Virus record (IMG/VR): IMGVR_UViG_3300043219_000566
Coordinates: 62,001 to 126,000 of that record
Reading direction: 5' to 3' (one strand)
Length of the DNA stretch: 64,000 nucleotides
This document shows, one piece after another, positions 7,717 through 38,230 of this stretch (its first letter is position 1; each line of letters begins with the position of its first letter). Both the position numbers and the translations under genes were made by a program. The notes under the pieces were generated by a model. That model saw only the letters and a list, made by a program, of their open reading frames with translations. It had not been told where the DNA came from and did no database searches.

Positions 7717-9912
7717 TTGCGTTCTTCGTCTGCCGCGTCGTCCTCCGGACGATCGCGCGGATGGACCAGCTCCCGCAAGGCGCGGAGAGCGTTCGTCACC
7801 GGTTCGATTATAAGAACCAGGACAAGCCGGAGCCAAGAGTCAAAGGGACTGTGCAAATTGGACATCGATGATCTGCTTTCGTTGATAGAGCAAGCCAAGG
7901 GCGTTCGCCCGCATCTGGACCCAGACATCGATAAGCTCACTACGCTAGCAAATGTGACCGAACGCCACATTGCAGCAGAGCGCGAAGCTGATCCCTTGTC
8001 CGAGCAGCGCTCGGACGACGAGATCGTCGCGCGGGTTGCAGATAGCGTAGAGCATGAACTCGACTTCTCCATGAAAGAAGCCTTACAGGCCTACGGGCGA
8101 GTCTTCGAGGACATTGCGCAGGGTTCCATCGTCAGCGCGCTCCCGATGATGCTGAAGCTGCGCGGACGGCCTTACACGCTCGAAGATCACTTTCCGATGG
8201 AGCCGATGTTTCGCACAGAACTGCCGGTGCAATTCCTATTGCGGTGCGGTCGGCAGGTTTCTAAGTCGACCACCCTAGCTGCTCAAGGGGTCATTCAAGC
8301 TGGTAGTACTCCATTTTTCAACTCCCTGTTTGTGACACCGCTGTTCGAGCAGTGCCGTAGGTTTTCCTCGAACTACGTCCGCCCCTTCGTCGTCGACAGT
8401 CCGATCTACCGAACAATCACAGACAACAGGTGCGAGCAATCGGTTCTTCAGCGCTCTTTCAAGAATCGTTCGATCATGTTCTTCAGCTACTGTTTGAAGG
8501 ACGCGGATCGCATTCGAGGTATTGCCGCGGATCGTGTCACGGTGGACGAGGTCCAAGATATCGACTGGGACCTGCTGCCCATCATCCTAGAGACCATGTC
8601 GGCCTCCAAATGGGCCGTAATGCAGGCGGCCGGGACGCCCAAGACGCTCGACAACACCATCGAGTATCTGTGGTCACGCAGCTCGCAGGCCGAGTGGATC
8701 ACCCGCTGCGAGGCGTGCAACCACTACAATATCGCCTGCACGTCTCACGATTTGCTCAAAATGATCGGAAAGCACACGGTGGTTTGCGCCAAGTGCGGAC
8801 GCCCGATCAACCCCCGTCCGGCTATGCACCCCAAGCCGTCTAAGCGCGGCACAGGGTTCTGGATGCACGCGTTCCCAGAGCGCGTCAGCGAATTTCCCGG
8901 TTACCACGCGTCCCAGATCATTTTCCCGATGCACTTTGCTTCGCAGCGCAAGTGGGAGATCTTGCGCCGGAAGATGGACCCGACGCACACGCCCCGGCAC
9001 GTGTTCATCAACGAGGTGCTAGGCGAAGGCGCGGATGCCGGGACCAAGCTCGTGACGCAGGCGGATTTGATCAACGCCTGCAAAATCTACGGGCGGCCCA
9101 ATAAGTACACCGAGGCGCTTTTAGCCAAAGGCGAGTACATCGACGTGGCGCTCGGCATCGACTGGGGTGGTTCAACCGCTCCATACGGAGCCGGGCGCGC
9201 TCATCTGCTGCTCAAGCCCGAGGAAGGGCAGTCCTACACTGCCATGGCAGTCGTGGGGCTCAAGAACGACGGGCGCATTGACGTGCTCTACGTCTACCGT
9301 TTCGACTTGATCGGCAACCACCTGGAAGAGGCTCGCGCCTGTTTGCGCGCCTGGAACGACGTCGACGACGGGCACGGGTCCACGTTGCTTTGCCACGACT
9401 ACGGCGGCGCAGGCAGCGTGCGTGAGACATTGCTCGTGCAGTCAGGGTTGCCGCTGCATAACGTCTGTGGCTGCCAATACGTGCATGCTCCGCAGCAGAA
9501 GATGATGGAATTCAAGCAGAAAGGTGCCCGCGGGTACTACGCTCTGGACAAAGCCAGATCGCTCATCTTCCTGGCCACTGCGATCAAAGCCGGATTCGTC
9601 GGATTTCCATCCTGGCTCACCTGTCGAGCGCGCATCAGCGATTTCCTGGCGTTGATGGAAGACATGCTGGAGCGTCCCGGCGGAGCCAACATCATCCGGG
9701 TTATCCGCAAGCCGGGAGTGCCGGACGACGTCGCGCACGCGGTAAACTTCGCTGCTTGTGGGCTGTGGCATCGCCACGGTTACCCCAACTTCAAGGACAT
9801 CCTCTCCCTCGAAGCCGTTATGGCGAAGCTCGACCGGTCAGCGGCCGCAGTCGACGCAGACGAAGCACTGCAGCAGTTTGTGCTCGACGACGACGCGATC
9901 CAAGGCGTGTAG
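7717..9912 (+). CDS. terL: Terminase large subunit, lambda gpA-like (true start may be downstream, e.g. TTG near 7858)
   Basis: ATPase motifs CGRQVSKST and RIRGIAADRVTVDEVQD; coupling motif GTPKT; Zn-ribbon CEAC...CAKC; nuclease-domain LGIDWGG. Confidence 0.88.
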   Translation: MRSSSAASSSGRSRGWTSSRKARRAFVTGSIIRTRTSRSQESKGLCKLDIDDLLSLIEQAKGVRPHLDPDIDKLTTLANVTERHIAAEREADPLSEQRSDDEIVARVADSVEHELDFSMKEALQAYGRVFEDIAQGSIVSALPMMLKLRGRPYTLEDHFPMEPMFRTELPVQFLLRCGRQVSKSTTLAAQGVIQAGSTPFFNSLFVTPLFEQCRRFSSNYVRPFVVDSPIYRTITDNRCEQSVLQRSFKNRSIMFFSYCLKDADRIRGIAADRVTVDEVQDIDWDLLPIILETMSASKWAVMQAAGTPKTLDNTIEYLWSRSSQAEWITRCEACNHYNIACTSHDLLKMIGKHTVVCAKCGRPINPRPAMHPKPSKRGTGFWMHAFPERVSEFPGYHASQIIFPMHFASQRKWEILRRKMDPTHTPRHVFINEVLGEGADAGTKLVTQADLINACKIYGRPNKYTEALLAKGEYIDVALGIDWGGSTAPYGAGRAHLLLKPEEGQSYTAMAVVGLKNDGRIDVLYVYRFDLIGNHLEEARACLRAWNDVDDGHGSTLLCHDYGGAGSVRETLLVQSGLPLHNVCGCQYVHAPQQKMMEFKQKGARGYYALDKARSLIFLATAIKAGFVGFPSWLTCRARISDFLALMEDMLERPGGANIIRVIRKPGVPDDVAHAVNFAACGLWHRHGYPNFKDILSLEAVMAKLDRSAAAVDADEALQQFVLDDDAIQGV

Positions 9913-9916
9913 CGCG

Positions 9917-10141
9917 CTACTCTATTAAGTCCGCGACATCGAAATCCAGGTCATCGCTATCCTCCTCGACGACGATATTTACGCCGGGCAGCGCATACGC
10001 CATTGTGATACCTGGCCAATCGGGCTCGCTGTTATTGTCCTCGATCCAGGCCCGTCGCTCAGAGTCCCAGTGCCAAGCCCAGCTGGTGAATTTCTCGCGA
10101 TGCGGGTACGTGTCGCCGGTAGCGACGTAGCGTTTGCTCAT
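9917..10141 (-). CDS. Small protein, DUF5710-like (TYPHREKF...WHWD...W)
   Basis: Resembles the phage motif T-Y-x2-K-E-x2-K-x2-G-x2-W-D-x4-W; convergent with the terminase. Confidence 0.55.
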   Translation of the reverse strand: MSKRYVATGDTYPHREKFTSWAWHWDSERRAWIEDNNSEPDWPGITMAYALPGVNIVVEEDSDDLDFDVADLIE

Positions 10142-10152
10142 GGGAAATTGTC

Positions 10153-10368
10153 CTAGATCCACACCTCGACGATTACCGGATCATCTTGCTCTTGCCGATT
10201 GATGCGGACCAAGCCCTCCGGGAGCGTATCGCGCGCTTCTTCCAGTGTGGCCTTGAGCGCGTGCGGCGGATCGTGCATGTGCACGCTTCTTAGGCGGATA
10301 GTAGCCCTGCGGACTACGAAATGGCTCGGGTAATCAGAAGGTCGTGCGTAGATAATGTACTGTTCCAT
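10153..10368 (-). CDS. Conserved phage hypothetical protein
   Basis: GGAG RBS; motifs IYARPSDYPSHFVVRR and LEEARDTLPEGL...DDPVIVEVW. Confidence 0.75.
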   Translation of the reverse strand: MEQYIIYARPSDYPSHFVVRRATIRLRSVHMHDPPHALKATLEEARDTLPEGLVRINRQEQDDPVIVEVWI

Positions 10369-10383
10369 CACTGTCTCCAGGCT

Positions 10384-10440
10384 GTATATATACTGCGCAA
10401 CCACTGCGTTTTCGAGGCAGTTTCAGCGCAGTATATATAC
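10384..10440. repeat. Perfect 15-bp inverted repeat GTATATATACTGCGC with a 27-nt spacer
   Basis: 10384-10398 and 10426-10440 are exact reverse complements; intergenic. Confidence 0.9.
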
Positions 10441-10443
10441 CGC

Positions 10444-10457
10444 CGTAGCGCGCTACG
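10444..10457. repeat. Palindrome CGTAGCGCGCTACG; the 12-bp core GTAGCGCGCTAC also occurs at 9909, 21546 and 37986
   Basis: Direct reading of four exact copies of the core. Confidence 0.9.
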
Positions 10458-10458
10458 A

Positions 10459-10860
10459 CTAGACGTGCATGGGAATAATGCACCCGTTGTCCAGCTGATC
10501 GGCGTCGTTGACGCACTCGTCGTAGTTGTCGTAGACTCGCTGGATCATGGTCTTGTCGTCGAAGTCGAAGATGGCCCAACGGTTCGGCGCAGGACGGCCG
10601 TTGATCGGGCAGTCGTCGTAGATCTTGTAGCCCTCGTCGTCGCGCTCGTCGAAATACGCCTTGATCGGCTTATCGCAGTCGCCCTCGGGCCAGTCCTCGC
10701 TGTGGAAACCGGTGCCGAACGTCTCATGCCAGAATTCTTTAGCATAGGCTAACAGCTCCTCCTTGGCAGAGATAGCATCGTCGGCAACGCGGATATCGTG
10801 GCCGTGCCGATGCCAGATACGTACGACCCAGACCCCTTTAGCCTGTGTCTGGTTGCTCAT
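10459..10860 (-). CDS. Hypothetical acidic protein
   Basis: AGGAG RBS before ATG 10860. Confidence 0.75.
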   Translation of the reverse strand: MSNQTQAKGVWVVRIWHRHGHDIRVADDAISAKEELLAYAKEFWHETFGTGFHSEDWPEGDCDKPIKAYFDERDDEGYKIYDDCPINGRPAPNRWAIFDFDDKTMIQRVYDNYDECVNDADQLDNGCIIPMHV

Positions 10861-11326
10861 CCTGTTTCTCCTCGTAATTGCTGCCGCAGTGCGAACAGAC
10901 CCCATCGGTCCCGAGTACACCGGGGCAGCCGTCGTCAGGGCAGTGACCCGCGCTCGGCACGCCCTCCTCGTCCATGGCTGTCATTTCCTGGCAATGGAAC
11001 AACCACTCCGCGTACCCGAGCTGAGTGTCTTTATTCGCGACTTCGTATCGCCAGTCGCTTCGCGGGTGCTTATCGTCTTCCTGGCTCGCGTGCGACAACG
11101 TCGGCCCCTCATCCTCTTCTTCCTCCAGGTCAGCTTCCTTAACGGTGCGTTCCAGCGGCACCACGTGCCAGCATTGACCAGACAGGTTCGTGACCGGGTT
11201 GTTCTGAGCCCAGTCGACTGCTTCGCCAGGGTCATTGAACGGAGGATCTCCGTATATCGTCATCCCAGTCGAAGGGTCCCAGACCACTACGACGTATTCA
11301 TTCGCCGGTATCGTTCGCTTCGCCAT
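10838..11326 (-). CDS. Hypothetical protein with DWRYEVANKDTQLGYAEW motif and C-terminal Zn ribbon
   Basis: AGGAG RBS; C-terminal CPDDGC...CSHC. Confidence 0.75.
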   Translation of the reverse strand: MAKRTIPANEYVVVVWDPSTGMTIYGDPPFNDPGEAVDWAQNNPVTNLSGQCWHVVPLERTVKEADLEEEEDEGPTLSHASQEDDKHPRSDWRYEVANKDTQLGYAEWLFHCQEMTAMDEEGVPSAGHCPDDGCPGVLGTDGVCSHCGSNYEEKQDEQPDTG

Positions 11327-11618
11327 CAGATTTCTCCTCCTTCAGTTCTGGATGCTCCTTCTCAACCTGGAGCCGGAATTTCTGATGCTGGAGATCGAAA
11401 TCGAACTCCTTGCTTTTGACCTTGGCGGTGAAGTCGCACTCCTCGCAGCGCAGCTCGGTGTCGTCGTCGATGTAATGCTCGGCTGCCTCCGGGACCTCGG
11501 TGCAAAAGTTGCTGGGGCACGGACCGCCGCTCAGCTCGTGCATGGTGACTTTCACCCATACCAGAGCGCGCGCGTACAGAGTCTCAGACGAATTGCATTT
11601 CGGACATCTGAATTCCAT
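11298..11618 (-). CDS. Zn-ribbon protein
   Basis: GGAG RBS; CPKC...CEEC. Confidence 0.7.
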   Translation of the reverse strand: MEFRCPKCNSSETLYARALVWVKVTMHELSGGPCPSNFCTEVPEAAEHYIDDDTELRCEECDFTAKVKSKEFDFDLQHQKFRLQVEKEHPELKEEKSDGEANDTGE

Positions 11619-11644
11619 CAGCAAAGCTCCTTGTAAGAACCAAC

Positions 11645-11683
11645 AAAAAGAAAGCACCGACGGTCCCGAAGGACCCCGGTGCT
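11645..11683 (-). terminator. Intrinsic terminator
   Basis: Stem AGCACCG..GGTCC/GGACC..CGGTGCT with a UUCG loop on the minus strand, followed by TTCTTTTT. Confidence 0.75.
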
Positions 11684-11814
11684 CTCCGGAGGGGAATTAA
11701 GCCGATTTTGAATAAACCAGTCGGCCGCCGCGGCGGCGACGACCGACCAGTCGGACAAAACGAGAACTCGGCGAGCACTCAACTAGCCTTGCCGGGCACT
11801 CAACTGCCAGAAGA

Positions 11815-12270
11815 TCAGTCTACTACGCCCGCAGCCCCAGGTACAGGGGTAAGCGGGCCAGGTAGCGCAGCCTCCTCAGACTGCATCCTGCGTCGTGACT
11901 CGTCCCATTCGCCCTTGAGGATACTGAACCAGCCCCGCTGACTCCAAATATAGCGCCGCGGGACTCGAAGCAGCTCGAACACCAACGTCTGCTGTTCGCG
12001 CGTGAGCCAGGTGATCTTGTCGTACTCGGTCAACGCATCCTTGACCGCTTGCGCTGCGGCGTCCGGGTCCTCGCCCGTCGCAGCCGCGCGTGCAGCGGCG
12101 CAATAGCGATCCGTGACCCCCTGCGTCGCCAGCATGTACAGGTCGTTGACGATCGTCTGTTGCTGAGCAACCGCGCGCCCGAAGGCCTCGTCGGCGATCT
12201 TGTTATGGTTCGACGTGCAGCTGCTGAGCAACATCAAGGGCAACGCGCACAGTAGAAACCATCGTCGCAT
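11815..12270 (-). CDS. Predicted lipoprotein
   Basis: Signal peptide MRRWFLLCALPLMLLSS-C with lipobox LSSC; AGGGG RBS. Confidence 0.7.
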   Translation of the reverse strand: MRRWFLLCALPLMLLSSCTSNHNKIADEAFGRAVAQQQTIVNDLYMLATQGVTDRYCAAARAAATGEDPDAAAQAVKDALTEYDKITWLTREQQTLVFELLRVPRRYIWSQRGWFSILKGEWDESRRRMQSEEAALPGPLTPVPGAAGVVD

Positions 12271-12271
12271 G

Positions 12272-12577
12272 TCAAATCCCCTTGAACATGACGCCGGAAA
12301 TGAAACCCCGTGCGTAAGCAGTAAACTTTTCGATGACATCCGCCTCGGCCGAGGCTTCGATCAACGCGTCCAGATCGGCTTGCGCCAATCCCGCAGTCGA
12401 AAGGTCGTGCTTCTCGCCCTCTTCCCAGGTGCGCGGTCCGGGCGTAGTGGGTGTTGCTCCGCCTGCAGGAATCTCGCCGTGGACGTCTAGCCACGCTTTG
12501 ACCATTCGGGCGAAGTCGGCCATAGCAGCCGGAGTTTTGCGCAAGAACTCGATGAACAGCTCGTTTACATCGGGCAT
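12272..12577 (-). CDS. Hypothetical protein (101 aa)
   Basis: GAGGAGG RBS; follows a candidate promoter. Confidence 0.75.
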   Translation of the reverse strand: MPDVNELFIEFLRKTPAAMADFARMVKAWLDVHGEIPAGGATPTTPGPRTWEEGEKHDLSTAGLAQADLDALIEASAEADVIEKFTAYARGFISGVMFKGI

Positions 12578-12604
12578 GACAGCCTCCTCTTAGATGTCGG
12601 TCTC

Positions 12605-12632
12605 ATTGTACGAGAGTAGTCAACTGGGGCAA
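12605..12632 (-). promoter_or_regulatory. Candidate host sigma70-type promoter
   Basis: TTGCCC-N16-TACAAT in the intergenic gap, about 15 nt upstream of the RBS of 12272..12577. Confidence 0.55.
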
Positions 12633-12633
12633 A

Positions 12634-15417
12634 TCAGCCGCTATGAGCCTCGTACGTCTTTGCCCATTTTCTAGCTCGGCGCTCCCAGAACTTGCCGTCG
12701 ATAACCCAGCCTGCCCGATCGGTACCGTGCTCGCCGATCAGCGCGCCTGCTTCACGTAACGCCACGGTTGTCGCCAGCGTATCCAGCAGAGGCAATTGCC
12801 TCCGGGCCAGAGCTTCGACGATCTTCTGCTTGGAGACGAAAACACGCTTGTTCTCGCTATCGATCACGACCGCGGAGCCGGAACCGTCTTCTTTCAATGC
12901 TATCCCGTATTCGCGCTTCAGGTAACCGTCGTGAAGCATCTGCGCCACGAGGTACACAAAGCGCGCAGCAAAGGGTTCGCGGCCGGAGTCCCGCAGCGCG
13001 TCGCTGGCGTATTTGAACACGAAAGCAGGGTCCTGTGTCCCGACGGACGTCGCCCACTCCTGCAAGCCCAAGAGCGTCGCGTGCGACGGGCTGGGAGCCT
13101 TTGGCAAGCGCCCGATGCCGCGCTGGTAATGTGCCAAGTAATGAACCAGCAACGCCGCGATCTCGCACTCCCGGTAGTAATCGCCTTCATCTTCGCCGGT
13201 ATCGACCACGATCCAATTGCCGCACATCACCGCCGTAGCGATCTGCATCGGCGATAGCGACATCAGCACGTTCTTGGCTTGGGGCAACGCCAGCCAGTCG
13301 GAAAGAACCAACGGCATGACACTTCTGGCTTCGGTATCTCGCACCAACACCGGTAAGTCGTGATCCCGCTGGGACTTGTCGAACTCGCCGAACTGCCCGC
13401 GCACCCGCTCCAAGTTGAAGTCCAGCAAGCCCATGTCCGCGGCCAACTTGTCCGCCGCAGCAGTAGCCAAATCGCCGACCAGGCCAATGCCGCGGGGCTG
13501 CTCGCGGTCCAGGCCGCCGAGCAAATTGGTGATCAGAGCTGCCAGCAACGCCCACATGGTTCCGTTGGCGTCGGTGGGCTCCAGCCAAGCGTCTACGACG
13601 GCGGTATCGAGCGCGCCCGGCCGGTCTACACGTAGCCCCGGGAGCACGTCGCCGGTCAGTCCCAGCGACGACTTCTCCTCGATCACCCCGCCCCGGATAG
13701 CAAAACGCGGGAACAAAAAGCCCTGTCGCCGATCGTCCCAGCCTACGCGGGTCAGGGCCTTGATAGTTTTCTCGATGTGGCTGAAGCGATGAGCCATGTC
13801 CCACAAGCGCTGCTGTTGCGAGTTCGAGACAAAAGGCGTGGTGCCTCCCGCGCTCTCGACCGTGTTGACGATAACGCCCAAGGCGTTGTTACGCAGCTCG
13901 CGCTGCGTAGTCGACATGGGATAACGGTGGCCCCGGTGGTGGATCACGCCGGTGTAGAACGTCTCCTTGCTCTCGTCATCACGGATACAGCGATCCAATT
14001 CGACAACGGCATCGGAGATCCGCTCCTCGACGCCGCGGCGGCGTAACGACCAATGGGACTCGTCGGGTCCGATATACTGAACCACGGTGCCGCCGAACAT
14101 GATAGTTTCCCGCACGCGGGTACGGTGCTCCAGGAGCTTTTCCAGGATCGCCCGCTCCTCGTAAGTGCGGCAAGTCTCCAGCAGACGAAGACGCTGATCG
14201 ATCGACAAGTCGACGGTGTCCAGGATCGCGCTGACGTCCTCCGGATTAGCCACCAACAGGAAGTCGCGGAAGGCCTCGTAGGCCGGGCGACGTCGTACAA
14301 TCAACTCCTCGACCCGCTGGCGAGCAGGCATACTCACGTCGAGCAGTTCGCGTAGCTCGCGCCAGGTCTGGTAAGTCTCGATGCTCTTTTCGAGATAGGT
14401 GATCGGGAAGCTGGGATTCTCCAGGTAAGATACGGAGGCGTCGGCCGTCGCGCTCAGAGCTTGTTTGAACAGCGCCGCGGTCGGAGCGTAATCCCAGAAA
14501 ACCACCTCTTCAACGCCGAGCTGCGCCCAGATCGTAGGGTCGGTGTCCTGGTGCCAAGCTACAAGCGGCAGGGGGTTATTATCCTCCTGGAACCGGCGGT
14601 ACTGCAGCCACAAAGCCAACCATGGGCTACTGAACGCTGCCACGCGTTTCGGGTTGCGCGGCAACGCGTCCATCAGCATCAGCCCAGGGTCTTTCTGATT
14701 CTCAGCATGAGCGGGGAACCACATGCGCACGCTGCGCCGCCAGCCCAGCAGTAACAACGAGCTGACGCGACCCAGCGTATTGCCCCACGGCAGCGCCAGA
14801 CAGGTGCGAAAGCTACTCTGGCTCAGCCCCGGCGGGATACCGTGGTTGAGCTGGTCCATGATGTCCTTGCGGCTCGTGGCGTGCAGCCAGCGGCCTACAC
14901 CCGCGGTAATCGCCTCTTGAGATTCCAGCAGGTGTACGGTGACACCGATGTTGTCAGACAGGATCGCGTGCAGATCGCGGTGCTCGGACCAATGCCGCCG
15001 AGCCTCGCGCGACCACCTGCGCACGCTTTTGCGCGGAGCCGAGTGATCCAAGATGTAATCGTTGATTGCGCGCTCGACCAGCATTTCCTGCGGTAAAAGA
15101 AACTCGGGTTCGCGCAGTACCTGTTGGATCGCGTCCCGCAGCTCGCCGCGGTGAAAAACCTCGGCCAGCAACTCCAGCGAATCCCAAGTGCGGTTGCACT
15201 CGTAACAATGCCACACGAGCCCGCCCTCCGGGGCGTTCATGACCCGCACGCAGAATTGCTTCTGTACCCCCGCGCTCGCCTTAGCATGCGCCAATCTTTT
15301 GCGTCGGCAAATAAGGCAAGGTACCATTGTCGGTATCGAACGGATCGGTATCGACTTTCCGAACAGCGCTCGGAATACCGGAGTGAACTGCAGGTACGAA
15401 TTTAAGGATGGACCCAT
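12634..15417 (-). CDS. Degenerate DnaG-type primase fusion (Zn-binding domain, TOPRIM-like, DUF927-like, helicase-like remnant)
   Basis: WHCYECNRTWDSLELLAEVF..LRDAIQQV resembles the DnaG CHC2 finger; LALPWGNTLGRV resembles DnaG FPIxxxxGxV; GWDDRRQGFLFP is DUF927-like; catalytic acidic residues and Walker A not evident. Confidence 0.55.
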   Translation of the reverse strand: MGPSLNSYLQFTPVFRALFGKSIPIRSIPTMVPCLICRRKRLAHAKASAGVQKQFCVRVMNAPEGGLVWHCYECNRTWDSLELLAEVFHRGELRDAIQQVLREPEFLLPQEMLVERAINDYILDHSAPRKSVRRWSREARRHWSEHRDLHAILSDNIGVTVHLLESQEAITAGVGRWLHATSRKDIMDQLNHGIPPGLSQSSFRTCLALPWGNTLGRVSSLLLLGWRRSVRMWFPAHAENQKDPGLMLMDALPRNPKRVAAFSSPWLALWLQYRRFQEDNNPLPLVAWHQDTDPTIWAQLGVEEVVFWDYAPTAALFKQALSATADASVSYLENPSFPITYLEKSIETYQTWRELRELLDVSMPARQRVEELIVRRRPAYEAFRDFLLVANPEDVSAILDTVDLSIDQRLRLLETCRTYEERAILEKLLEHRTRVRETIMFGGTVVQYIGPDESHWSLRRRGVEERISDAVVELDRCIRDDESKETFYTGVIHHRGHRYPMSTTQRELRNNALGVIVNTVESAGGTTPFVSNSQQQRLWDMAHRFSHIEKTIKALTRVGWDDRRQGFLFPRFAIRGGVIEEKSSLGLTGDVLPGLRVDRPGALDTAVVDAWLEPTDANGTMWALLAALITNLLGGLDREQPRGIGLVGDLATAAADKLAADMGLLDFNLERVRGQFGEFDKSQRDHDLPVLVRDTEARSVMPLVLSDWLALPQAKNVLMSLSPMQIATAVMCGNWIVVDTGEDEGDYYRECEIAALLVHYLAHYQRGIGRLPKAPSPSHATLLGLQEWATSVGTQDPAFVFKYASDALRDSGREPFAARFVYLVAQMLHDGYLKREYGIALKEDGSGSAVVIDSENKRVFVSKQKIVEALARRQLPLLDTLATTVALREAGALIGEHGTDRAGWVIDGKFWERRARKWAKTYEAHSG

Positions 15418-16588: not shown

Positions 16589-16599
16589 CGGAGCACATT

Positions 16600-17578: not shown

Positions 17579-17628
17579 TTCAAATACCTCCACGGCGCGT
17601 CGATAGCTAAACGAAAGACGACGTGTTC

Positions 17629-17664: not shown

Positions 17665-17689
17665 ATTGTGTTTGGCAGTCGCGGATCGT

Positions 17690-19435: not shown

Positions 19436-19443
19436 GAGCAACT

Positions 19444-20548: not shown

Positions 20549-21292
20549 CTACGTTCGTGCCAACGCAGCTCGGCTCCGCTCCTCGCGGATCTTCGGGATG
20601 TTGGCTTCGACCGCGCGCGAGAACTTCTCCCAGCGCTTTTTGTCGTAGTTCTCCAAGACGGAAACCACGCTGTTCAGTTCCGTCATCATCTCCGCTAGCT
20701 GGTGAGCCAGGTGGCCCAGCAACGCAGAACGCTCCGTCTTAGCGTGGTCGTGCGCAGCATTGAACATGTCAGGGTCGTCGGCCCACTGATCCAACTCGGC
20801 CCGCTCAGGCATCTCGGCGATGCGCAGCACATCCGGCGGATCGAACACGCCGTCGTTGTCGAGCGCGATGCCGATGTAGCGCCGGACCTCGTGGCTGAAC
20901 TCTGGCAAGGACTCGTTGGGCTCGCGCTCCAACGACACGTTGAGCGCTACCTCGTAGATGCCCCAGATGATCTCCTCGGCATCGGCCGGATCGAAGCGCT
21001 TGAAATTGGCCTCGGCCCCGCTGAGCACGTTGCAAGTGGTGATGAAGAACTCAACCGAGATGTAGAACAGATCCGTGGTGTAGCAGGTGATCAACGCCTG
21101 GAGCTTGTCCTGGTTGATCCGGGGCGGAATGGCTCCGAAGTCCTCGGCAATCGCCATCCACAGCGACTCGGGGTCCCAAGCAAATAGCTCGGTGCCGTAC
21201 TTGTCGAACACGATCGCCAGCAGCGTGGTAGCAAATGAGTCGTCATTCTCCAGCGTGCTTGCCAGTAGCTTCCGACTCTGCGTCGTCGCCAT
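20549..21292 (-). CDS. Hypothetical protein (possibly structural), last gene of the late operon
   Basis: 247-aa ORF with GGAG RBS. Confidence 0.8.
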   Translation of the reverse strand: MATTQSRKLLASTLENDDSFATTLLAIVFDKYGTELFAWDPESLWMAIAEDFGAIPPRINQDKLQALITCYTTDLFYISVEFFITTCNVLSGAEANFKRFDPADAEEIIWGIYEVALNVSLEREPNESLPEFSHEVRRYIGIALDNDGVFDPPDVLRIAEMPERAELDQWADDPDMFNAAHDHAKTERSALLGHLAHQLAEMMTELNSVVSVLENYDKKRWEKFSRAVEANIPKIREERSRAALART

Positions 21293-21806
21293 CCGGTTTC
21301 TCCAAGGGGCAGAGCTGCAGGAACAAAGCCGCGAGGCAAAGGCTATGCGACCAGATTATCAGTCCACCGCCAGCCAGCAGATCGTCCGGTTTTGCCGCGC
21401 TCTGCGTCTCGATGTCGAAGATATTGCGCTCGCTACTCAGGCGCGCCCAGCGTCCATCGAGAATCTCCAGCATCGGCAACGGCAAGCGCGGGCGCTCGGA
21501 CGGGTCCGCACGGTGTTGTGCCACAGCTTGAGCGAACTCCAACCCGTAGCGCGCTACGGCTTCACGGAAGAAAGCCACCACCGAAAGCGCATCCGACTCC
21601 ATTATGACCCGGCGGTCGAGCAAATGCGCGACAATCACGACCCCCAATGCAGCGTCCGGGGCAACGTCGCTGCCGCGATTCAGCCCGTACCAATCTGCGC
21701 CCTTTGGAAAGAGCTGGCCTCCGTAGCGTTTGATGCTGCCGAGAGCCAGCCCAGTCCGGGTCAGATCGCGTGCCGAAATTAGAGCATGGATCTGGTCAGT
21801 TTCCAC
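21243..21806 (-). CDS. Hypothetical protein
   Basis: 187-aa ORF overlapping both neighbours; GGAGG upstream of the GTG. Confidence 0.7.
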   Translation of the reverse strand: METDQIHALISARDLTRTGLALGSIKRYGGQLFPKGADWYGLNRGSDVAPDAALGVVIVAHLLDRRVIMESDALSVVAFFREAVARYGLEFAQAVAQHRADPSERPRLPLPMLEILDGRWARLSSERNIFDIETQSAAKPDDLLAGGGLIIWSHSLCLAALFLQLCPLEKPDGDDAESEATGKHAGE

Positions 21807-27817: not shown

Positions 27818-27827
27818 AGCTCCCTCG

Positions 27828-28681: not shown

Positions 28682-28692
28682 CGCACGCTCCT

Positions 28693-31857: not shown

Positions 31858-31859
31858 GG

Positions 31860-32258
31860 CTAGCCTCCGGGCGAACTCAGGGAAAATACGACTCCGGCTG
31901 GAACGCCTATGCTTTCTCCGGCAGGAATCAGGACACTCTGTTCCTGATACATGGCTAATTCAGTTCCCAGAAAAACGGCGATGTATCCTATGCGCCAGGT
32001 AACCGCTGGATCAACCGTCTGGTTCAAAAACGAGAACGCGCTGGATTGCACGTAAGGCGGAGCCCCGTCGTAGTACGTCCAGCTCAGCTGAACGAACACT
32101 GCCGTGAGTGGCACGTACTGCAGCAACCCGCCGAAGCTGCCGCCTTCCTTGGTCAAGCTCACGCCGCGCGTCAGCGGAATCGCAAGCCAGTTTCCCGCAG
32201 CTCCCGCATCACCGAAAGCCCGGTCAGCGATCTTCAGCGCAAAGTAGCTCGTAATCAC
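31860..32258 (-). CDS. Tail/baseplate-associated beta-sheet protein
   Basis: GTG start overlapping the upstream TGA with GAGG RBS; ends LIPAGESIGVPAGVVF, as seen in phage tail-associated proteins. Confidence 0.6.
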   Translation of the reverse strand: MITSYFALKIADRAFGDAGAAGNWLAIPLTRGVSLTKEGGSFGGLLQYVPLTAVFVQLSWTYYDGAPPYVQSSAFSFLNQTVDPAVTWRIGYIAVFLGTELAMYQEQSVLIPAGESIGVPAGVVFSLSSPGG

Positions 32259-33070: not shown

Positions 33071-35325
33071 TAGAACGTCCCGCGGTAGTGGCTGCGCGAG
33101 CAGGCATACAGGGTCTGGTTAGACGCGTTCGACACCGTCCAGAACACCACGACATCGCCAGTCACGAGCGCCGACACCCACTGTCCACCGTAGCCCTGCT
33201 CCTCAACGTTCAACATGTTGGAAGCGATTTGCGTACCGCCGGGCCGGTCGATCCATTCAAAATCGGCGTTCATCCAGACCTCGACTGCCGAGTACACAAA
33301 GGGCGGCAAGCAGCCGTACTTGTCCGTGATCCGAGCGAACCGCCCGCCGGTGCCGCCGCTGCCGCCGCCCGGCGTGATAAACAGCCGCAGTTCTTCGTTG
33401 AACGCGCAGTCCCCGGCAAACGGGCCGTCTACCCAGTCCTGCACCGGCAGCGCGCTGTACTCCAGCGAGTTGAGCGGCTCAGCTTCCGAGTTGCCGACAT
33501 CCGAAATGTGATAGAAGTTCACATCCGGGCTGCGCTTGCCGCAGGGAATGAACAAGCTGAGCTGCAGATCGAGATTGCAGTCGTCATCGAACTCGTTCTT
33601 GGCCCAGTGCCCATGCGCCCAGCTCGGTCCGTACGAGTCGCCCCACTGCAGCGAGTTGCGAAACCACTCCAAGTTCTGGTGGATGTTGACCGAGCCCGCT
33701 GGAAGCAAGCTGTAGTACGGATGGTACTCGTAACGATCCGGATCAGCTGTCTGGTAGCGCTCCTGGCGGTCTTTCATGATCAACGATACGAAGGGATTTG
33801 CGAGCAGATCGTCGTCGAGCGAGCGATGCGCGCCGCCTGTCGGACATGGCATATTCAACGACAGATCCAAAATCGGCAGGCACGGAGTTAGCTGCCCGGC
33901 GACTTTACCCTCGCGAACTCGAACAGTGATTTGCGGCCCACCGAAAGCCCAGCTGCGCTCGGGAAAGTCCAAGTCAGCCGGTAGCTCGGTGTAAAAGTAC
34001 GAATCGAGGAACGTCACGTCGCCCGGGACGCTGTCAGTCTCGACCGACACCGGACAAGGCAGATTCAACGCCAACTGCAAATCAGGCGAGCACAGCTCGG
34101 CTCCAGAGCCGGAGTCGTAGAAGTTCACTCGTAGATTGGCTGTTGGCTCCTGCGCCCAAGGCAGCAGACCACCCGAGCCCGAGAACTCGATCGCAACCTG
34201 ACTAGTGGCAGTGAACTCGACTGGGCAAGGGAAGTACAACCGCAGATCCAGACTGGGGTAGCAATCGTCGGCGCATTGCGAAGACGATCCCACTATGTAG
34301 AACGTACCGGACGGTGGCCCCGAGAGAGTATATCGCTTTACGACTTTGAGTTTAGGCGTGTGCCAGTCGACTGGGCAAGGAATATTCAAACTGAGGCCCA
34401 ATTGGAAATCGCAACTGCCGGGAGACTGTTCCGCCCACAGCTCGATCTCCGGTCGCCGGTCAGCCGGAATACAACTGATTTCCTTGCCGTAACTGGTTTC
34501 CTGGGGCGTGATAGTGCCAGGACACGGCAGCGCCATGTCGACTACAAGCTCGTAGTCGCAGCCGCCGGTCCCAGTGACTTGCAGCGTCGTGCCACCGGCA
34601 CCTAACCCAGGCTCATATACAGCAGTTCCGATTCCGCCCGTGAGTCCGGTTGGACACGGCAGACGCAAGTTGAAGGACAACACGAAGTCGCAGGGACCGA
34701 TGCCCGAGGAGCTGTAGTAGTCGTCAGCCGGGATCACCAGCAGCTCGGCCTCTCCTTCGTCGAGCGGGATACTTCCATCGAACTCGACGGTCCCTATGCC
34801 GCCGACCAAGTCGGTCGGACACGGCAAACCGATGCTGAGGCTGATCCCCAGATCACAATCGCCGCTGTCGATCGTCTCCGCTGTACCTCCGGCAGTCTCC
34901 AGCGCCGGGTCGTACTCGACGTCGATGTACGCTTCGGTAAACGAGACGAAACACGGGATCGACAGCTGAAAATCAATGTGGGGCTCGCAGTAGTCGCTCG
35001 TCGGGTAGGTAAGCACAACGCTGAAAGCGTCGGCTACCGCGCTGCTCTGGTTGGGCAAGAACACGCTGCCGGTAACGACCATCGGGTAGCAACCGAGATC
35101 AATCGGCGGAATCGGGATCGGCGGGTCGGTGGGTGTGACAATTGTGTCCGGCGGACCAGGGAAAGCGCACGAGTCGACGAATTCGTAATCGCCGATTTCC
35201 GGGTTGTCAGGCGCGCACTCTTTGTCGAACGCCGCGTCCCCGCGATCAGGACCTTCGCCGACCTCGCCAGCAACCGCGGACGATGACGATGATCCCACTC
35301 CGAGATTCAACGGCCACCAGGGCAT
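33070..35325 (-). CDS. Repeat protein with nine C-x10-P-C motifs, probable tail fibre or shaft
   Basis: Repeats read directly from the translation; about 25 Cys; N-terminal GSSSSSA. Confidence 0.75.
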   Translation of the reverse strand: MPWWPLNLGVGSSSSSAVAGEVGEGPDRGDAAFDKECAPDNPEIGDYEFVDSCAFPGPPDTIVTPTDPPIPIPPIDLGCYPMVVTGSVFLPNQSSAVADAFSVVLTYPTSDYCEPHIDFQLSIPCFVSFTEAYIDVEYDPALETAGGTAETIDSGDCDLGISLSIGLPCPTDLVGGIGTVEFDGSIPLDEGEAELLVIPADDYYSSSGIGPCDFVLSFNLRLPCPTGLTGGIGTAVYEPGLGAGGTTLQVTGTGGCDYELVVDMALPCPGTITPQETSYGKEISCIPADRRPEIELWAEQSPGSCDFQLGLSLNIPCPVDWHTPKLKVVKRYTLSGPPSGTFYIVGSSSQCADDCYPSLDLRLYFPCPVEFTATSQVAIEFSGSGGLLPWAQEPTANLRVNFYDSGSGAELCSPDLQLALNLPCPVSVETDSVPGDVTFLDSYFYTELPADLDFPERSWAFGGPQITVRVREGKVAGQLTPCLPILDLSLNMPCPTGGAHRSLDDDLLANPFVSLIMKDRQERYQTADPDRYEYHPYYSLLPAGSVNIHQNLEWFRNSLQWGDSYGPSWAHGHWAKNEFDDDCNLDLQLSLFIPCGKRSPDVNFYHISDVGNSEAEPLNSLEYSALPVQDWVDGPFAGDCAFNEELRLFITPGGGSGGTGGRFARITDKYGCLPPFVYSAVEVWMNADFEWIDRPGGTQIASNMLNVEEQGYGGQWVSALVTGDVVVFWTVSNASNQTLYACSRSHYRGTF

Positions 35326-35341
35326 TCATCACGTCCGTTTG

Positions 35342-36232
35342 CTAAGGCGCAGCTGCCGAGCTACTCAGCCCTTCTTTGTCGACCAAGATGAGGCAAAATC
35401 CGGCCGAGACCTCCGTGTCGCTGGCACTCATGTTGGCTCCGCGCACCTTGATATCGGTTCTCTCGTCGAACACGTGCGGAGGAGAGTAGTCATGTTGCCA
35501 TGCCGATACGCCCGCCGCAGCTAGCCCGACGTGCTCCAGCAACCGGAAAGTCTTGCCGAGGTCGCGACGGAATAGCTTGACATCGCCGGTCTTTGACCCG
35601 CCCTTCAAAATCGTCGCCCACCACATCGTCAGCAGAGCGATCTTGCCCGCCGGAACCGTGTAAATCGCCATCAACGTCTGCTGGTTCTCACTCGCGAAGT
35701 AAGCACGCGCATTAACCAGGTCTGTAGGCACGCCGCCGTTGCCCGTAGCCGTGCTATTGATAGCCGCGTAGACGTTGCCCGCGGTCGCCGCCGAGCCGTC
35801 GGAATACATGCGGAAGATACGCTTCCATAGCTTGCCGCTGACCTCGACTGCCGTCTGACCATCAAGCTGGACCGTCGCTTCTTGCGATTCCCAGTTCTCG
35901 TCCAGGCCGACAAGTGTGACCTGGTAAGTCGCGCCGCTATCGCCCGCCTCGTCACTGGAAACGTAGAGCGTCTGCGCTGTTGCATCGTACGTATAATCCT
36001 CAGCGGCACCGTTGATGCCCAGATCCCAGATATCGGCGTCGGTGCCAGTGTCGATTTCCGTGTTCAACCCGAACTTGTGGACCATCGACCAGCCGGAGAT
36101 GCTGTTCTGGCCTTCGATATGCGAGCGCGCGACCTCTATCAAAAAGGGAACGGTAACCTGGTATTGCTCACCACCAAGCTCTAGCCCCGCAATGATCTCT
36201 CCGCCTCTGCCGGGATTAAGTTGTATCGCCAT
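35342..36232 (-). CDS. Conserved phage virion-associated protein (KFGxN...DIW...Y...VSS...D family)
   Basis: AGGAG RBS; motifs HKFGLNTEIDT..DIWD, LDGQTAV, IYTVPAGK. Confidence 0.7.
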   Translation of the reverse strand: MAIQLNPGRGGEIIAGLELGGEQYQVTVPFLIEVARSHIEGQNSISGWSMVHKFGLNTEIDTGTDADIWDLGINGAAEDYTYDATAQTLYVSSDEAGDSGATYQVTLVGLDENWESQEATVQLDGQTAVEVSGKLWKRIFRMYSDGSAATAGNVYAAINSTATGNGGVPTDLVNARAYFASENQQTLMAIYTVPAGKIALLTMWWATILKGGSKTGDVKLFRRDLGKTFRLLEHVGLAAAGVSAWQHDYSPPHVFDERTDIKVRGANMSASDTEVSAGFCLILVDKEGLSSSAAAP

Positions 36233-36242
36233 CGATATGCTC

Positions 36243-37166
36243 CTACTCGCATTCTTCCATCGACTCACGCCCGGTAATCCGGATCGTATGCTCACTGGGC
36301 GAGACGACCTCTACCCCCCGCCCGCCCTGGATACGGAACGAGCCAGAAGCGTCGGCTTCGACACCGTTGATGTTGGTGATAACCTCATGGCAGCGCGTGG
36401 CACAATCGATGTCGATCGAAGCGGCCCGCCGTTTCAGCTCTGTGTAAGTCCGGGGAACCGCTTCGCACGGCTCGCCCAGCCCGGCCCCGCGCCGCGCGCT
36501 GAAGCGCATTGCGTTGTTGCGCGACAGCACGTTGATCTGGCAGTTGTATCCCTCACGGAAACGCACGTCACCCGCAACTGCTTCGCCGCCCGGCGCGAAC
36601 GGGTACTGCTCGGGGTTGATCGACACGCTGGACGAACTGGACCCCTGTTCCGATGTTGCACAATTCGCCGTGGTCCGCGGCTGATTAGCCACCAGGAACT
36701 TGTTGACGAAGTGGCCGTCGACTACCTGCAAGCAACGCTGCTCGATGTACGGCACCGTCAGTGGAGCCGAACCGATCAGCGCCGAGTAAGAATAAGACCC
36801 AGAAGAGTACGGATTACCGTGCACCACCCAGCCGTAGCCATGCTGCACGCCGTCGGCCACAAGCAGCAAGTCCGAACGTTGCCAGGGGTAGGTGCCCTTG
36901 TCCGTGGCCAAAGACACGCCGTCCACGGCAGCTCCGGCAGCGTAGATCTCGAAGGTAAGTTGGCTAGCGGGGCCGACCTGGCTTAGCAACACACGGTGCT
37001 CTGGATCGGTGGGATCGAAGCCGGAGCTGGAGAACAGCACCAACCCGAAATCCACGATGGTGAGTCGCTGATTGTCCGGGACCGCAACGATCCCGCTTAC
37101 CGACTCGTCGATCAGCGGGTAGTTGCGATTCAAGTTCCGGGCGTAGAAATCAGCGTCGGCCATCAA
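36243..37166 (-). CDS. Tail-associated protein, paralog family member 5
   Basis: NLNRNYPL; GDVRFREGYN; ITNINGVEADASG. Confidence 0.75.
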   Translation of the reverse strand: MMADADFYARNLNRNYPLIDESVSGIVAVPDNQRLTIVDFGLVLFSSSGFDPTDPEHRVLLSQVGPASQLTFEIYAAGAAVDGVSLATDKGTYPWQRSDLLLVADGVQHGYGWVVHGNPYSSGSYSYSALIGSAPLTVPYIEQRCLQVVDGHFVNKFLVANQPRTTANCATSEQGSSSSSVSINPEQYPFAPGGEAVAGDVRFREGYNCQINVLSRNNAMRFSARRGAGLGEPCEAVPRTYTELKRRAASIDIDCATRCHEVITNINGVEADASGSFRIQGGRGVEVVSPSEHTIRITGRESMEECE

Positions 37167-37984
37167 CCCTCTCCGAAGAAGAACATCCTGATCCCGTTCG
37201 GAATCGGGACAACTCGCAGCGCCGGTTCTTGCGCGTAATTCTCGATGTACCCGACTAAGAGCTGGACAGTCCCGGAACCATGCGGTCCGATATTCTCCTC
37301 GTCAAACTGGATTGTCTTGAGCAAGCGATCACGTTCTACCGGGGCACCTTCGGCTTCGCAGTCTCGGCGTACGAACAACGGATCGCCTACCACATCGACC
37401 CTGATGATCTCCTCCCAGCCGTGCCAGACGCCGAACTGACCACCCAACGACGAGGACGAGCCGTCCTGGTTCACAACGGTCAGCTGTACGCCGTTCTCGC
37501 CGACCAGGGGGACGTCGCCGTGAAAGATCTCGCCGGACTCCAGCCGCACGGTGCGTACGCAGGCTTGAGGCTGCGGTACAACCACCGTAGCTGCGAACCG
37601 CGTTTGTGGCATCTGGAAGGTGTAGGTCCCGTCGGGCCAGCCAGCGAGCTTGGACAACCCGCGGTCGCCCACCGGGTAGCCCAGCAAGCAACCTAGATAG
37701 ATCTCCCCGTCGGCGAAGAAATCGACCCAACTCGGTGGAGCATTGCGAGTGAAAGATCCGCTGCCGAGCGCCCCGCGTCCGTCGGACAAAGAGATTGTGA
37801 CCTGTTCGCCGACTTCGATAGACGCGATGAACAGATCGTGTCGTCCGCCCGGCGGGTAGAGACGCCCGTCGATAAAGACATCGTTCTCGATAGCAACCTG
37901 CCCGTTGGTGCGCGTAGCGCTAGGGTCAAACGGGTAGGCCGTATCGACGGACTCGTCATAATACGTTGGCAGCGTGACTCGCAT
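37163..37984 (-). CDS. Tail-associated protein, paralog family member 4
   Basis: DTAYPF; GDVPLVGENG. Confidence 0.75.
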   Translation of the reverse strand: MRVTLPTYYDESVDTAYPFDPSATRTNGQVAIENDVFIDGRLYPPGGRHDLFIASIEVGEQVTISLSDGRGALGSGSFTRNAPPSWVDFFADGEIYLGCLLGYPVGDRGLSKLAGWPDGTYTFQMPQTRFAATVVVPQPQACVRTVRLESGEIFHGDVPLVGENGVQLTVVNQDGSSSSLGGQFGVWHGWEEIIRVDVVGDPLFVRRDCEAEGAPVERDRLLKTIQFDEENIGPHGSGTVQLLVGYIENYAQEPALRVVPIPNGIRMFFFGEG

Positions 37985-37993
37985 CGTAGCGCG

Positions 37994-38230
37994 CTACGCT
38001 TTCTTTCCTTTCTTCGCTACTGGCGGAGGCGCAGTCTTGTACGGCACGGCTTCCTCGGACGTCACCGAGTTGTCGCGCGCGACCAGGAAACCCGACCCGG
38101 TGAGCGCGACCATGACGGCCTCGATACTGAAGGTCGTGTCAGCGTTCCCGTCCATCAAGTAGTAGACCTGCAAGGCTACTGCGCTGATGATCAACAAGAC
38201 GCCTGCTAGCGTAGTTCTCCAACTTTTCAT
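37994..38230 (-). CDS. Holin-like two-TM protein
   Basis: MKSWRTTLAGVLLII...GFLVARDNSVTSE; two TM helices, basic C-tail; GGAG RBS. Confidence 0.55.
   Translation of the reverse strand: MKSWRTTLAGVLLIISAVALQVYYLMDGNADTTFSIEAVMVALTGSGFLVARDNSVTSEEAVPYKTAPPPVAKKGKKA

What the first reader, a model, noticed from the sequence alone, without database searches (positions are those of the whole stretch)
9909..37998. Four exact copies of the palindrome GTAGCGCGCTAC, three at gene ends; it reads TAG on both strands
Seen: the 12-bp core occurs at 9909-9920, 10445-10456, 21546-21557 and 37986-37997, and extends to 14-16 bp in three of them. At 9909 the two TAGs are the actual stop codons of the convergent terminase and 9917..10141 genes. 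At 37986 one TAG is the holin-like gene's stop and the next ATG follows directly. At 10445 it starts 2 nt after a stop. At 21546 it is in-frame Val-Ala-Arg-Tyr. A rough expectation for one given 12-mer at about 62% GC is about 0.007 copies per 64 kb (the motif was chosen post hoc). Inference: an operator for a dimeric phage regulator, a recombination site used to insert genes at gene ends, or an RNA hairpin signal.
Basis: partly seen in the sequence, partly recalled or inferred. Interest (0 to 1): 0.6.

Follow-up and report, generated by a model that had tools for sequence, protein, structure and literature searches.

The report
Dispersed 10–12-bp palindrome of a jumbo phage
The four palindromes are real and belong to about 24 evenly spaced copies of one exact word spread over a 216-kb uncultivated phage genome and kept in its relatives, most likely landing sites on the DNA for a two-fold symmetric protein rather than stop, hairpin or recombination signals.

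Summary
The window is part of a 216,501-bp IMG/VR phage record from a marine sediment metagenome. GTAGCGCGCTAC occurs 20 times in it, against about 0.03 expected, and is its most over-represented 12-mer.

The conserved core is the 10-mer TARCGCGYTA:
- 24 sites in this genome;
- 37 sites in a syntenic relative that has 45% GC and is about 39% identical at protein level;
- present in 7 of 8 sampled genomes (this one included) of the sub-clade, which spans 39-60% GC;
- absent from 21 records of the wider clade.

Site positions are almost never orthologous. Sites inside genes arise by substitution. Spacing is more even than random in both complete genomes. This points to selection on the DNA word and its density, not on its position.

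The gene-end and stop-codon pattern is significant only in this GC-rich genome (13 of 24 sites, P=6e-9). There the codons GTA and CTA are rare, so I read the pattern as a way of avoiding a coding cost. In the relative, 30 of 37 sites lie inside ORFs.

As an RNA hairpin the word is very weak, and the genome's ordinary terminators look different.

My best reading is a dispersed binding site for a symmetric dimer. One candidate binder is a predicted homodimeric protein with a ParB/Noc/KorB-type DNA-binding domain. That link is only circumstantial, because the same protein family also occurs in relatives that lack the motif.

The parts
9909..9920 (.). Exact palindrome GTAGCGCGCTAC. It supplies the TAG stop of the terminase gene (+) and of the convergent 74-aa ORF (-).
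10445..10456 (.). Exact palindrome (14 bp with its C/G flanks). It lies 2 nt downstream of the stop of ORF 10459..10860(-) and next to a 15-bp-arm inverted repeat.
21546..21557 (.). Exact palindrome (16 bp with flanks), inside ORF 21243..21806(-), read as Val-Ala-Arg-Tyr.
37986..37997 (.). Exact palindrome (14 bp with flanks). It supplies the TAG stop of ORF 37994..38230(-). The next ORF (37163..37984, -) starts 1 nt after it.
46822..46833 (.). Hybrid site GTAGCGCGTTAC (TARCGCGYTA class), inside ORF 46102..47934(-), read as Val-Thr-Arg-Tyr.
7858..9912 (+). Large terminase subunit (GpA-type ATPase). It is one of the few + strand genes, and its stop codon lies in the motif.
9917..10141 (-). 74-aa ORF of unknown function. 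Its stop is the second TAG of the motif at 9909. It is shared only with the closest relative (L006).
10459..10860 (-). 133-aa ORF of unknown function that ends 2 nt before the motif at 10445.
21243..21806 (-). 187-aa ORF of unknown function that carries the intragenic site at 21546.
37994..38230 (-). Its stop lies in the motif at 37986.
37163..37984 (-). 273-aa ORF of unknown function. Its ATG follows the motif at 37986 by 1 nt.

Best explanation
The palindrome is a cis-acting DNA word: core TARCGCGYTA, in this genome almost always GTAGCGCGCTAC. It is maintained across the whole phage chromosome at about one copy per 5-10 kb. I propose that it is the landing site of a two-fold symmetric, sequence-specific DNA-binding protein, and that its function depends on the number and even spread of sites rather than on where each one sits. 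In manner it resembles Noc-binding sites on the Bacillus chromosome or KorB operators on plasmid RK2, which mark, organise or coat a replicon.

Shown:
- extreme over-representation;
- sharply bounded, exact sequence;
- conservation across very divergent relatives of different GC content;
- rapid positional turnover;
- origin by substitution inside genes;
- even spacing.

Inferred:
- Protein binding itself.
- The stop-codon pattern in this GC-rich genome as a by-product. Here the codons GTA and CTA that the word needs inside an ORF are rare. Sites are therefore cheapest at gene ends, where the TAG in the word can serve as the stop.

Candidate binder (weakly supported): the 242-aa basic protein at G000 33088-33816(-), which lies outside the window. 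It has a ParB/Noc/KorB-type DNA-binding domain, lacks the CTPase domain, and is predicted to form a symmetric homodimer.
For: Abundance:
- 20 exact 12-mers against 0.03 expected; it is the top k-mer.
- No conserved flank beyond +-1.
- Only 6 one-mismatch variants, 3 of them the R/Y hybrids.

The relative G001 (202,582 bp, 44.9% GC, median 39% protein identity):
- 34 TAGCGCGCTA plus 3 hybrids.

Partial loci of 6 further relatives (39-58% GC):
- 10 sites in 115 kb against about 0.45 expected;
- the sites include TAACGCGTTA and hybrid forms;
- one of the six loci has none.
- Two further loci, L212 (a second stretch of the contig that holds L006) and L213 (not placed by terminase), hold 1 site each.

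Wider clade: 21 records of 144-211 kb hold 0-1 copies, the same as the control word.

Turnover:
- No strictly orthologous sites between G000 and G001.
- Intragenic sites align to near-compatible peptides (VxRY, xSAL) without indels, sometimes to identical residues encoded differently.

Spacing is more even than random: CV 0.57 (P=0.0026) and 0.60 (P=0.0005).

Codon cost: GTA is 11% of Val codons and CTA 6% of Leu codons in G000, against 36% and 21% in G001. This matches the gene-end bias, which is present only in G000.

Candidate protein:
- The family profile hits the Noc DNA-binding domain at E=1.1e-6.
- The AF2 model has pLDDT 93.9.
- The top 12 VIA rows are all Noc/ParB DNA-binding domains, with Z 8.3-7.2, rmsd about 3 A and about 100 residues aligned; KorB 6.5, SopB 6.0.
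- The homodimer model scores 0.77 against a best control of 0.00. That mark was reached by 20 of 30 proteins solved as pairs of one chain and by 1 of 23 solved as single chains. Runs agree in at least 85% of contacts, and the partner's pLDDT is at least 81.
Against: No binding was or could be tested here.

The candidate protein family is also encoded by motif-less relatives (G004 E=9e-46, G016 5e-40, and 16 others). Those genomes have no dispersed palindrome. So presence of the protein does not predict presence of the motif.

The G000 and G001 orthologues are only 22% identical, and their recognition helices differ, yet the site is identical.

No ParB_N CTPase domain is present, so sliding in the ParB/KorB manner is not expected.

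Such exactness (few degenerate copies) is more typical of nuclease or modification sites than of transcription-factor sites.

The gene calls behind the position statistics come from my own simple codon-usage caller.
Confidence: 0.5

Rival explanations
1. Target of a sequence-specific nuclease, nickase or DNA-modifying enzyme: programmed nicks as in phage T5, or a modification motif. The phage would keep regularly spaced copies as entry or marking points.
For: The word is exact and sharply bounded, with few degenerate copies. It has a GCGC-rich core. Spacing is even. The sub-clade shares a block of genes, some of them read here as possibly nucleotide- or DNA-modifying: ThyX-like, dTMP-kinase-like, MazG-like and several glycosyltransferases. 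tblastn does not find these in the motif-less G004 and G016.
Against: Neither G000 nor G001 has a C5 or N4/N6 methyltransferase family. HNH domains occur only in G000, not in G001. A symmetric cut at 24-37 sites would fragment the genome. The only run that holds the sequence is kept as contigs, so ends cannot be seen.
Confidence: 0.13
2. Transcriptional operator or roadblock at gene junctions, stoperator-like. A repressor dimer bound between genes would stop or gate read-through, including at the convergent terminase junction.
For: In G000, 13 of 24 sites lie in the stop-codon zone (P=6e-9). One sits between convergent genes. Several lie 1-40 nt upstream of start codons. The word is palindromic.
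Against: In G001, 30 of 37 sites are inside ORFs, often in the middle of long genes, and the junction bias is not significant. Sites are not positionally conserved even between close relatives. Even spacing along the whole genome is not expected of operators.
Confidence: 0.12
3. RNA-level signal: a bidirectional terminator, a stabilising 3' hairpin or a processing site.
For: The sites sit at gene ends in G000. Three sites (G000 144907, 159813, 174495) are followed within 2-4 nt by ATTTTTG. The site at 9909 lies between convergent genes.
Against: The hairpin energy is -1.1 kcal/mol (12-mer) to -3.5 (14-mer). Canonical terminators in the same window are 9-11-bp GC stems with T runs. Most G001 sites are inside ORFs. 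17 of 20 exact sites have no T run.
Confidence: 0.08
4. Site for a conserved host factor, for example Chi-like protection against RecBCD/AddAB that works from either end because the word is palindromic, or a gyrase site.
For: Selection dependent on density and spacing and fast turnover of positions are what Chi-like words show.
Against: The same word is kept in phages of 39-60% GC, which presumably infect different hosts. Known Chi words are short, asymmetric and host-specific (established knowledge). Hosts are unknown here.
Confidence: 0.07
5. Recombination or insertion junction for gene cassettes, or a REP-like miniature mobile element (GTAG...CTAC ends).
For: Sites 9909 and 10445 bracket two small accessory genes that are shared only with the nearest relative. 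The GTAG/CTAC ends recall GTAG-tagged REPs (PMC3733652).
Against: The relative with those two genes lacks both flanking sites. Intragenic sites arise by substitution, not insertion. No Y1/RAYT transposase is present. The word is 10-12 bp and perfectly paired, not 20-40 bp with an unpaired tag.
Confidence: 0.04

Closest known systems
17-bp dyad repeat of Cluster O mycobacteriophages (TGTTCGGNNNCCGAACA; PMC4351075, PMC6439249)
   Same: An invariant short inverted repeat present more than 30 times throughout a phage genome, both between and inside ORFs, without orientation. Its function is unknown.
   Different: The phages, host range and sequence are unrelated. Those genomes are about 70 kb. That repeat has a 3-bp spacer. 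No evidence was reported there for even spacing, positional turnover or conservation across very divergent genomes of different GC content.
Noc-NBS, ParB-parS and KorB-OB systems (OB core TTTAGCGGCTAAA, PMC11790492; Noc structures 6y93, 7ol9)
   Same: Exact palindromic sites, often intragenic and scattered over a replicon, bound by dimers with the ParB-type helix-turn-helix domain. This phage encodes a predicted dimeric protein with that domain. The OB site and this word share TAGC...GCTA arms.
   Different: No ParB_N/CTPase domain is found in the phage. The site is shorter (10-12 bp). Binding is untested. The protein family also occurs in relatives without the motif.
Stoperators of Cluster A mycobacteriophages (L5 gp71 sites; from established knowledge)
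   Same: Tens of copies of one short word across a phage genome, many at gene junctions, bound by a phage protein.
   Different: Stoperators are asymmetric, oriented with transcription and intergenic. This word is palindromic and, in G001, mostly intragenic.
GTAG-tagged REP elements with RAYT transposases (PMC3733652)
   Same: GTAG...CTAC ends; located after genes and between convergent genes in G000.
   Different: REPs are 20-40 bp imperfect hairpins with an unpaired tag and an associated Y1 transposase. Here the word is a perfect 10-12-mer and no RAYT is present.
Density-selected genomic words (Chi, Neisseria DUS; from established knowledge)
   Same: Selection for the number and spread of an exact word, with turnover of individual positions.
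   Different: Those words are asymmetric and tied to a host machine. This one is palindromic and follows a phage lineage across GC contents.

Membership tests
REP / RAYT elements | A 20-40 bp imperfect palindrome with an unpaired GTAG tag | tested here: not met
   The word is a perfect 10-12 bp palindrome and its GTAG is paired with CTAC. There is no conserved flank.
REP / RAYT elements | An associated Y1 (RAYT) transposase gene | tested here: not met
   PF01797 has no match in G000 or G001.
Intrinsic (Rho-independent) terminator | A stable GC-rich stem followed by a U run | tested here: not met
   Folding energy is -1.1 to -3.5 kcal/mol. A T run follows only 3 of 20 sites. The genome's own terminators have 9-11-bp stems.
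ParB/Noc/KorB-type site-and-binder system | An exact palindromic site repeated on the replicon | tested here: met
   24 sites in G000 and 37 in G001.
ParB/Noc/KorB-type site-and-binder system | An encoded protein with the ParB-type HTH DNA-binding domain that forms a dimer | tested here: met
   HMM E=1.1e-6 to the Noc DNA-binding domain. VIA Z 8.3-7.2 to Noc/ParB, 6.5 to KorB. Dimer model score 0.77 against a best control of 0.00. These are predictions only.
ParB/Noc/KorB-type site-and-binder system | An N-terminal ParB_N CTPase domain (clamp and sliding) | tested here: not met
   PF02195 is absent from G000 and G001 in six frames.
ParB/Noc/KorB-type site-and-binder system | The protein binds this site, and protein and site co-occur | tested here: inconclusive
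   Binding cannot be tested with these tools. The family is present in 18 of 21 motif-less relatives, so co-occurrence is not specific.
Stoperator system | An asymmetric site, oriented with transcription and intergenic | tested here: not met
   The word is palindromic, and 30 of 37 G001 sites are intragenic.
Methylation / restriction-modification motif | A cognate DNA methyltransferase is encoded | tested here: not met
   PF00145 and PF01555 are absent. Other modification enzymes are not excluded.
Dispersed dyad repeats of phages (Cluster O type) | Invariant inverted-repeat arms, tens of copies, both inter- and intragenic, no orientation | tested here: met
   compared with PMC4351075. This is a resemblance in kind, not homology.

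The most novel reading that the evidence does not exclude
A sub-clade of uncultivated ~200-kb phages marks its own chromosome with 25-40 evenly spaced copies of one exact palindrome. These copies would serve as loading or anchoring points for a CTPase-less ParB/Noc-like dimer, or another phage protein, that organises, segregates or shields the genome. This would be a phage counterpart of nucleoid-occlusion or KorB-type site networks, with sites continually re-created by point mutation wherever coding cost is lowest.
Probability: 0.15. Interest if true: 0.8.

Novelty: new variant of a known kind. Interest (0 to 1): 0.55.

Why it matters
Dispersed invariant palindromes have been noted in a few phage groups but never explained. 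This case adds evolutionary evidence that such a word is under selection as DNA:
- the same 10-mer is kept in genomes that share almost no nucleotide similarity and differ by 20 points of GC;
- individual positions are constantly replaced;
- spacing stays even.

That narrows the possible mechanisms to ones that depend on genome-wide coverage. It gives a precise, cheap test: a 10-bp duplex against a short list of candidate proteins, or end and modification mapping on virion DNA.

It also shows how a genome-wide DNA word can shape gene ends. In the GC-rich member a third of the sites double as TAG stop codons.

Tried and rejected
- Phage databases. megablast of the region found nothing. The terminase has only 28% identity at best to cultured phages.
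- Single-protein locus search in IMG/VR found nothing. A locus search with the candidate binder's alignment also found nothing.
- Literature search for the motif strings found no relevant paper.
- The 14-mer scan of IMG/VR gave 76 single-copy background contigs. One of them led to the relative G001.
- The genome search cannot read Logan/ENA contigs and draws no relatives for a virus record. Whole-genome counts therefore exist only for G000, G001 and the IMG/VR outgroups.
- Reads. The only holder is one marine-sediment DNA run kept as contigs. It could not show ends, nicks or RNA.
- Pfam on the whole proteome, using nonsense alignments as containers. The lists that were shown hold no ParB_N and no methyltransferase.
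- PHROGs on sub-clade-specific unknowns gave only a Holliday-junction resolvase.
- My tblastn-based list of 45 'sub-clade-specific' genes proved too insensitive for fast-evolving proteins. The candidate binder was on it but is in fact clade-wide.
- Outgroups have no alternative dispersed palindrome. An apparent GTGAC-N4-GTCAC enrichment in G016 is a Gly-Val-Thr coding repeat.
- HNH nickase idea: HNH domains occur only in G000.
- Apparent shared positions between G000 and G001 (136878/62259 and 196742/148498) are offset by 10 and 4 alignment columns and lie in different frames. They are independent gains.
- TRF does not see the 36-nt array noted in passing, because most of each unit is variable.
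Full report
**Observation.** The four exact copies of GTAGCGCGCTAC are at the stated coordinates, and a one-mismatch copy (GTAGCGCGTTAC) lies at 46822. Dinucleotide shuffles of the window give 0.30 matches on average, and none of 100 reaches five. The flanks extend the palindrome to 14 bp at 10445 and 37986 and to 16 bp at 21546.

**Whole genome.**
- The window is bases 62001-126000 of a 216,501-bp IMG/VR virus record (G000, 59.7% GC). The only public run that holds it is a marine sediment metagenome.
- In my rough gene calls, 258 of 271 genes are on the - strand.
- G000 holds 20 exact copies, against 0.03 expected in third-order Markov simulations.
- It is the most over-represented 12-mer, and TAGCGCGCTA is the most over-represented 10-mer.
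- There are only six one-mismatch variants, three of them the symmetric R/Y hybrids.
- Nothing is conserved beyond one base on either side.

**Relatives.**
- The terminase has homologues of 50-79% identity on metagenomic contigs.
- The 12-23-kb stretches that could be fetched from six of them (38.7-57.8% GC) hold 10 copies of TARCGCGYTA in 115 kb, against about 0.45 expected. These copies include TAACGCGTTA and hybrid forms. One of the six loci has none.
- A 14-mer scan of IMG/VR led to G001, a 202,582-bp record of 44.9% GC. It is collinear with G000, but only about 5.7 kb is alignable as DNA, and median protein identity is 39% over 106 shared genes.
- G001 carries 34 TAGCGCGCTA plus 3 hybrids. 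Nineteen of them have the G...C flanks. The conserved unit is therefore the 10-mer: 24 sites in G000 and 37 in G001.
- Twenty-one records of the wider clade (terminase 39-44% identical, 144-211 kb) hold 0-1 copies, no more than a control word.

**Position relative to genes.**
- In G000 the TAG inside the word is the stop codon of a - strand gene at 8 sites. Three more sites lie 2-5 nt after a stop, and two lie in the last 14 codons.
- Thirteen of 24 sites fall in a stop-codon zone that covers 8% of the genome (P=6e-9).
- In G001 only 5 of 37 do (P=0.23), and 30 of 37 are inside ORFs.
- Intragenic sites use both open frames, Val-Ala-Arg-Tyr or x-Ser-Ala-Leu-x.
- They align without gaps to orthologous peptides that are merely similar (VDRY, VAAY, RAL and the like), or identical but encoded differently.
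- No site is strictly orthologous between G000 and G001. Two near-coincidences are offset and in different frames.
- Even the closest relative lacks the two sites around the small genes after the terminase, although it has those genes.
- Sites are thus created and lost by point substitution while the word and its density persist.
- GTA is 11% of Val codons and CTA 6% of Leu codons in G000, against 36% and 21% in G001. Placing the word inside an ORF is therefore costlier in G000. This is a sufficient reason for its shift to gene ends, where the embedded TAG can be the stop. That last step is inference.

**Spacing.** Treating the genomes as circular, the gaps between sites have a coefficient of variation of 0.57 in G000 (P=0.0026 against random placement) and 0.60 in G001 (P=0.0005). 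The largest gaps are unusually small. Even coverage together with positional turnover indicates a function that depends on density.

**What it is not.**
- As RNA, the 12-mer folds with -1.1 kcal/mol and the 14-mer with -3.5. The obvious terminators in the window are 9-11-bp GC stems with T runs. Three G000 sites are followed by ATTTTTG, which remains a minor unexplained point.
- No ParB_N, C5 or N4/N6 methyltransferase or Y1 transposase family is found in G000 or G001 in six frames.
- HNH domains occur only in G000.

**Proteome context.** The proteome includes multisubunit RNA polymerase domains, sigma-like proteins, a PolA-UDG fusion, SbcCD, DnaB, RNR and ThyX. The phage therefore probably runs its own transcription. 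A GC-rich palindrome is a poor promoter candidate, and sites in mid-ORF would be pointless as promoters.

**Candidate binder.**
- G000 33088-33816(-), outside the window, encodes a basic 242-aa protein with an HTH-like stretch.
- ESM-Atlas look-alikes point to ParB-HTH/DUF1016_N proteins.
- An exhaustive HMM search found 111 relatives.
- The 44-sequence profile matches the DNA-binding domain of Noc at E=1.1e-6. Eighteen members match DUF1016_N.
- The AF2 model has mean pLDDT 93.9.
- Foldseek E-values are not significant, but ParB-superfamily DNA-binding domains head the list.
- VIA-align gives Z 8.3-7.2 (rmsd about 3 A, about 100 residues) to Noc and ParB, 6.5 to KorB-operator and 6.0 to SopB. 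Z near 8 for a helical domain is not decisive by itself.
- A homodimer model scores 0.77 against a best control of 0.00. That mark was reached by 20 of 30 proteins solved as pairs of one chain and by 1 of 23 solved as single chains. Runs agree in at least 85% of contacts, and pLDDT is at least 81.
- So the phage encodes a probably dimeric protein of the kind that reads palindromes such as NBS, parS and OB. The OB core TTTAGCGGCTAAA (PMC11790492) shares TAGC...GCTA arms with the word.

**Against this link.**
- The family is also present in 18 of 21 motif-less relatives.
- Those relatives have no dispersed palindrome.
- The G000 and G001 orthologues are only 22% identical.
- I therefore give about 0.2 to this protein being the binder, and about 0.5 to the general reading of a dispersed site for a symmetric DNA-binding protein selected for coverage.

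**Comparison with the known.**
- The nearest described thing is the invariant 17-bp dyad repeat of Cluster O mycobacteriophages. It has 34 copies, both inter- and intragenic, and its function is unknown (PMC4351075).
- In mechanism the word most resembles Noc/KorB-type site networks, but a defining feature, the CTPase domain, is missing.
- It fails the tests for REP/RAYT, intrinsic terminators and stoperators.
- I rate it a new variant of a known kind. The novelty lies in the evolutionary evidence and in the lineage, not in the existence of such repeats.

**Limits.**
- Gene calls are from a home-made codon-usage caller.
- Only two complete motif-bearing genomes were available.
- No reads or RNA could be examined.

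Noticed in passing
G000 8,979-14,300 (locus L096, outside the window); G004 about 12,400-14,000: A multi-kilobase, strictly 36-nt-periodic array of about 113 units in two blocks flanking ORF 10520-11644. Each unit is GGCRCGCT-N10-GGRTRACT-N10. There are many stops in all frames. The motif-less relative G004 has an array of the same period but different sequence at a similar map position. It may be iteron- or centromere-like. It is unexplained.
   Followed up: partly
G016 4,390-5,880 (loci L198-L208): About 17-19 copies of a roughly 23-nt repeat (starting CCCACGCGTATAGGG) at a 61-nt period. The geometry is CRISPR-array-like, in an outgroup phage genome.
   Followed up: no
window 10384-10398 and 10426-10440: A perfect 15-bp inverted repeat (GTATATATACTGCGC / GCGCAGTATATATAC) with a 27-nt spacer. 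It lies in the intergenic gap directly beside the palindrome at 10445.
   Followed up: no
G000 144907, 159813, 174495 (outside the window): Three palindrome copies are followed within 2-4 nt by ATTTTTG and then by a -10-like hexamer about 25-35 nt downstream. This subset may take part in termination or re-initiation.
   Followed up: partly
G000 whole genome; window 50537-51286 (sigma-like gene): The phage encodes multisubunit RNA polymerase domains (Rpb1/Rpb2 types), sigma-70 region 3/4 proteins (phrog_351), a DNA PolA fused to a UDG domain, a RuBisCO large-chain-like protein, a Tad2-like anti-Thoeris domain, and a cluster that I read as heptose-type sugar-nucleotide and glycosyl/sulfotransferase genes.
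   Followed up: partly
window 7858-9912 and relatives L005-L211: The terminase is one of very few genes on the opposite strand from the rest of the genome, and this arrangement is conserved in all relatives. One relative's terminase (P0004, L005) carries a LAGLIDADG intein.
   Followed up: no
L007 20085-21692: A relative encodes a Ro60/TROVE protein with a vWA domain, which suggests a phage-borne Ro/Y-RNA-type system.
   Followed up: no
G000 33832-35328 (outside the window): The gene next to the ParB-HTH-like gene resembles DUF932 phage proteins (Atlas TM 0.60-0.67). It carries a palindrome copy (G000 34816), and so does its orthologue in the closest relative (L212 9004).
   Followed up: partly
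G000, several places: Other repeated 16-18-mers occur 4-5 times each, for example words containing GAGATCATCGATGC and CTGCTGAGGAAAGC. They were not examined.
   Followed up: no
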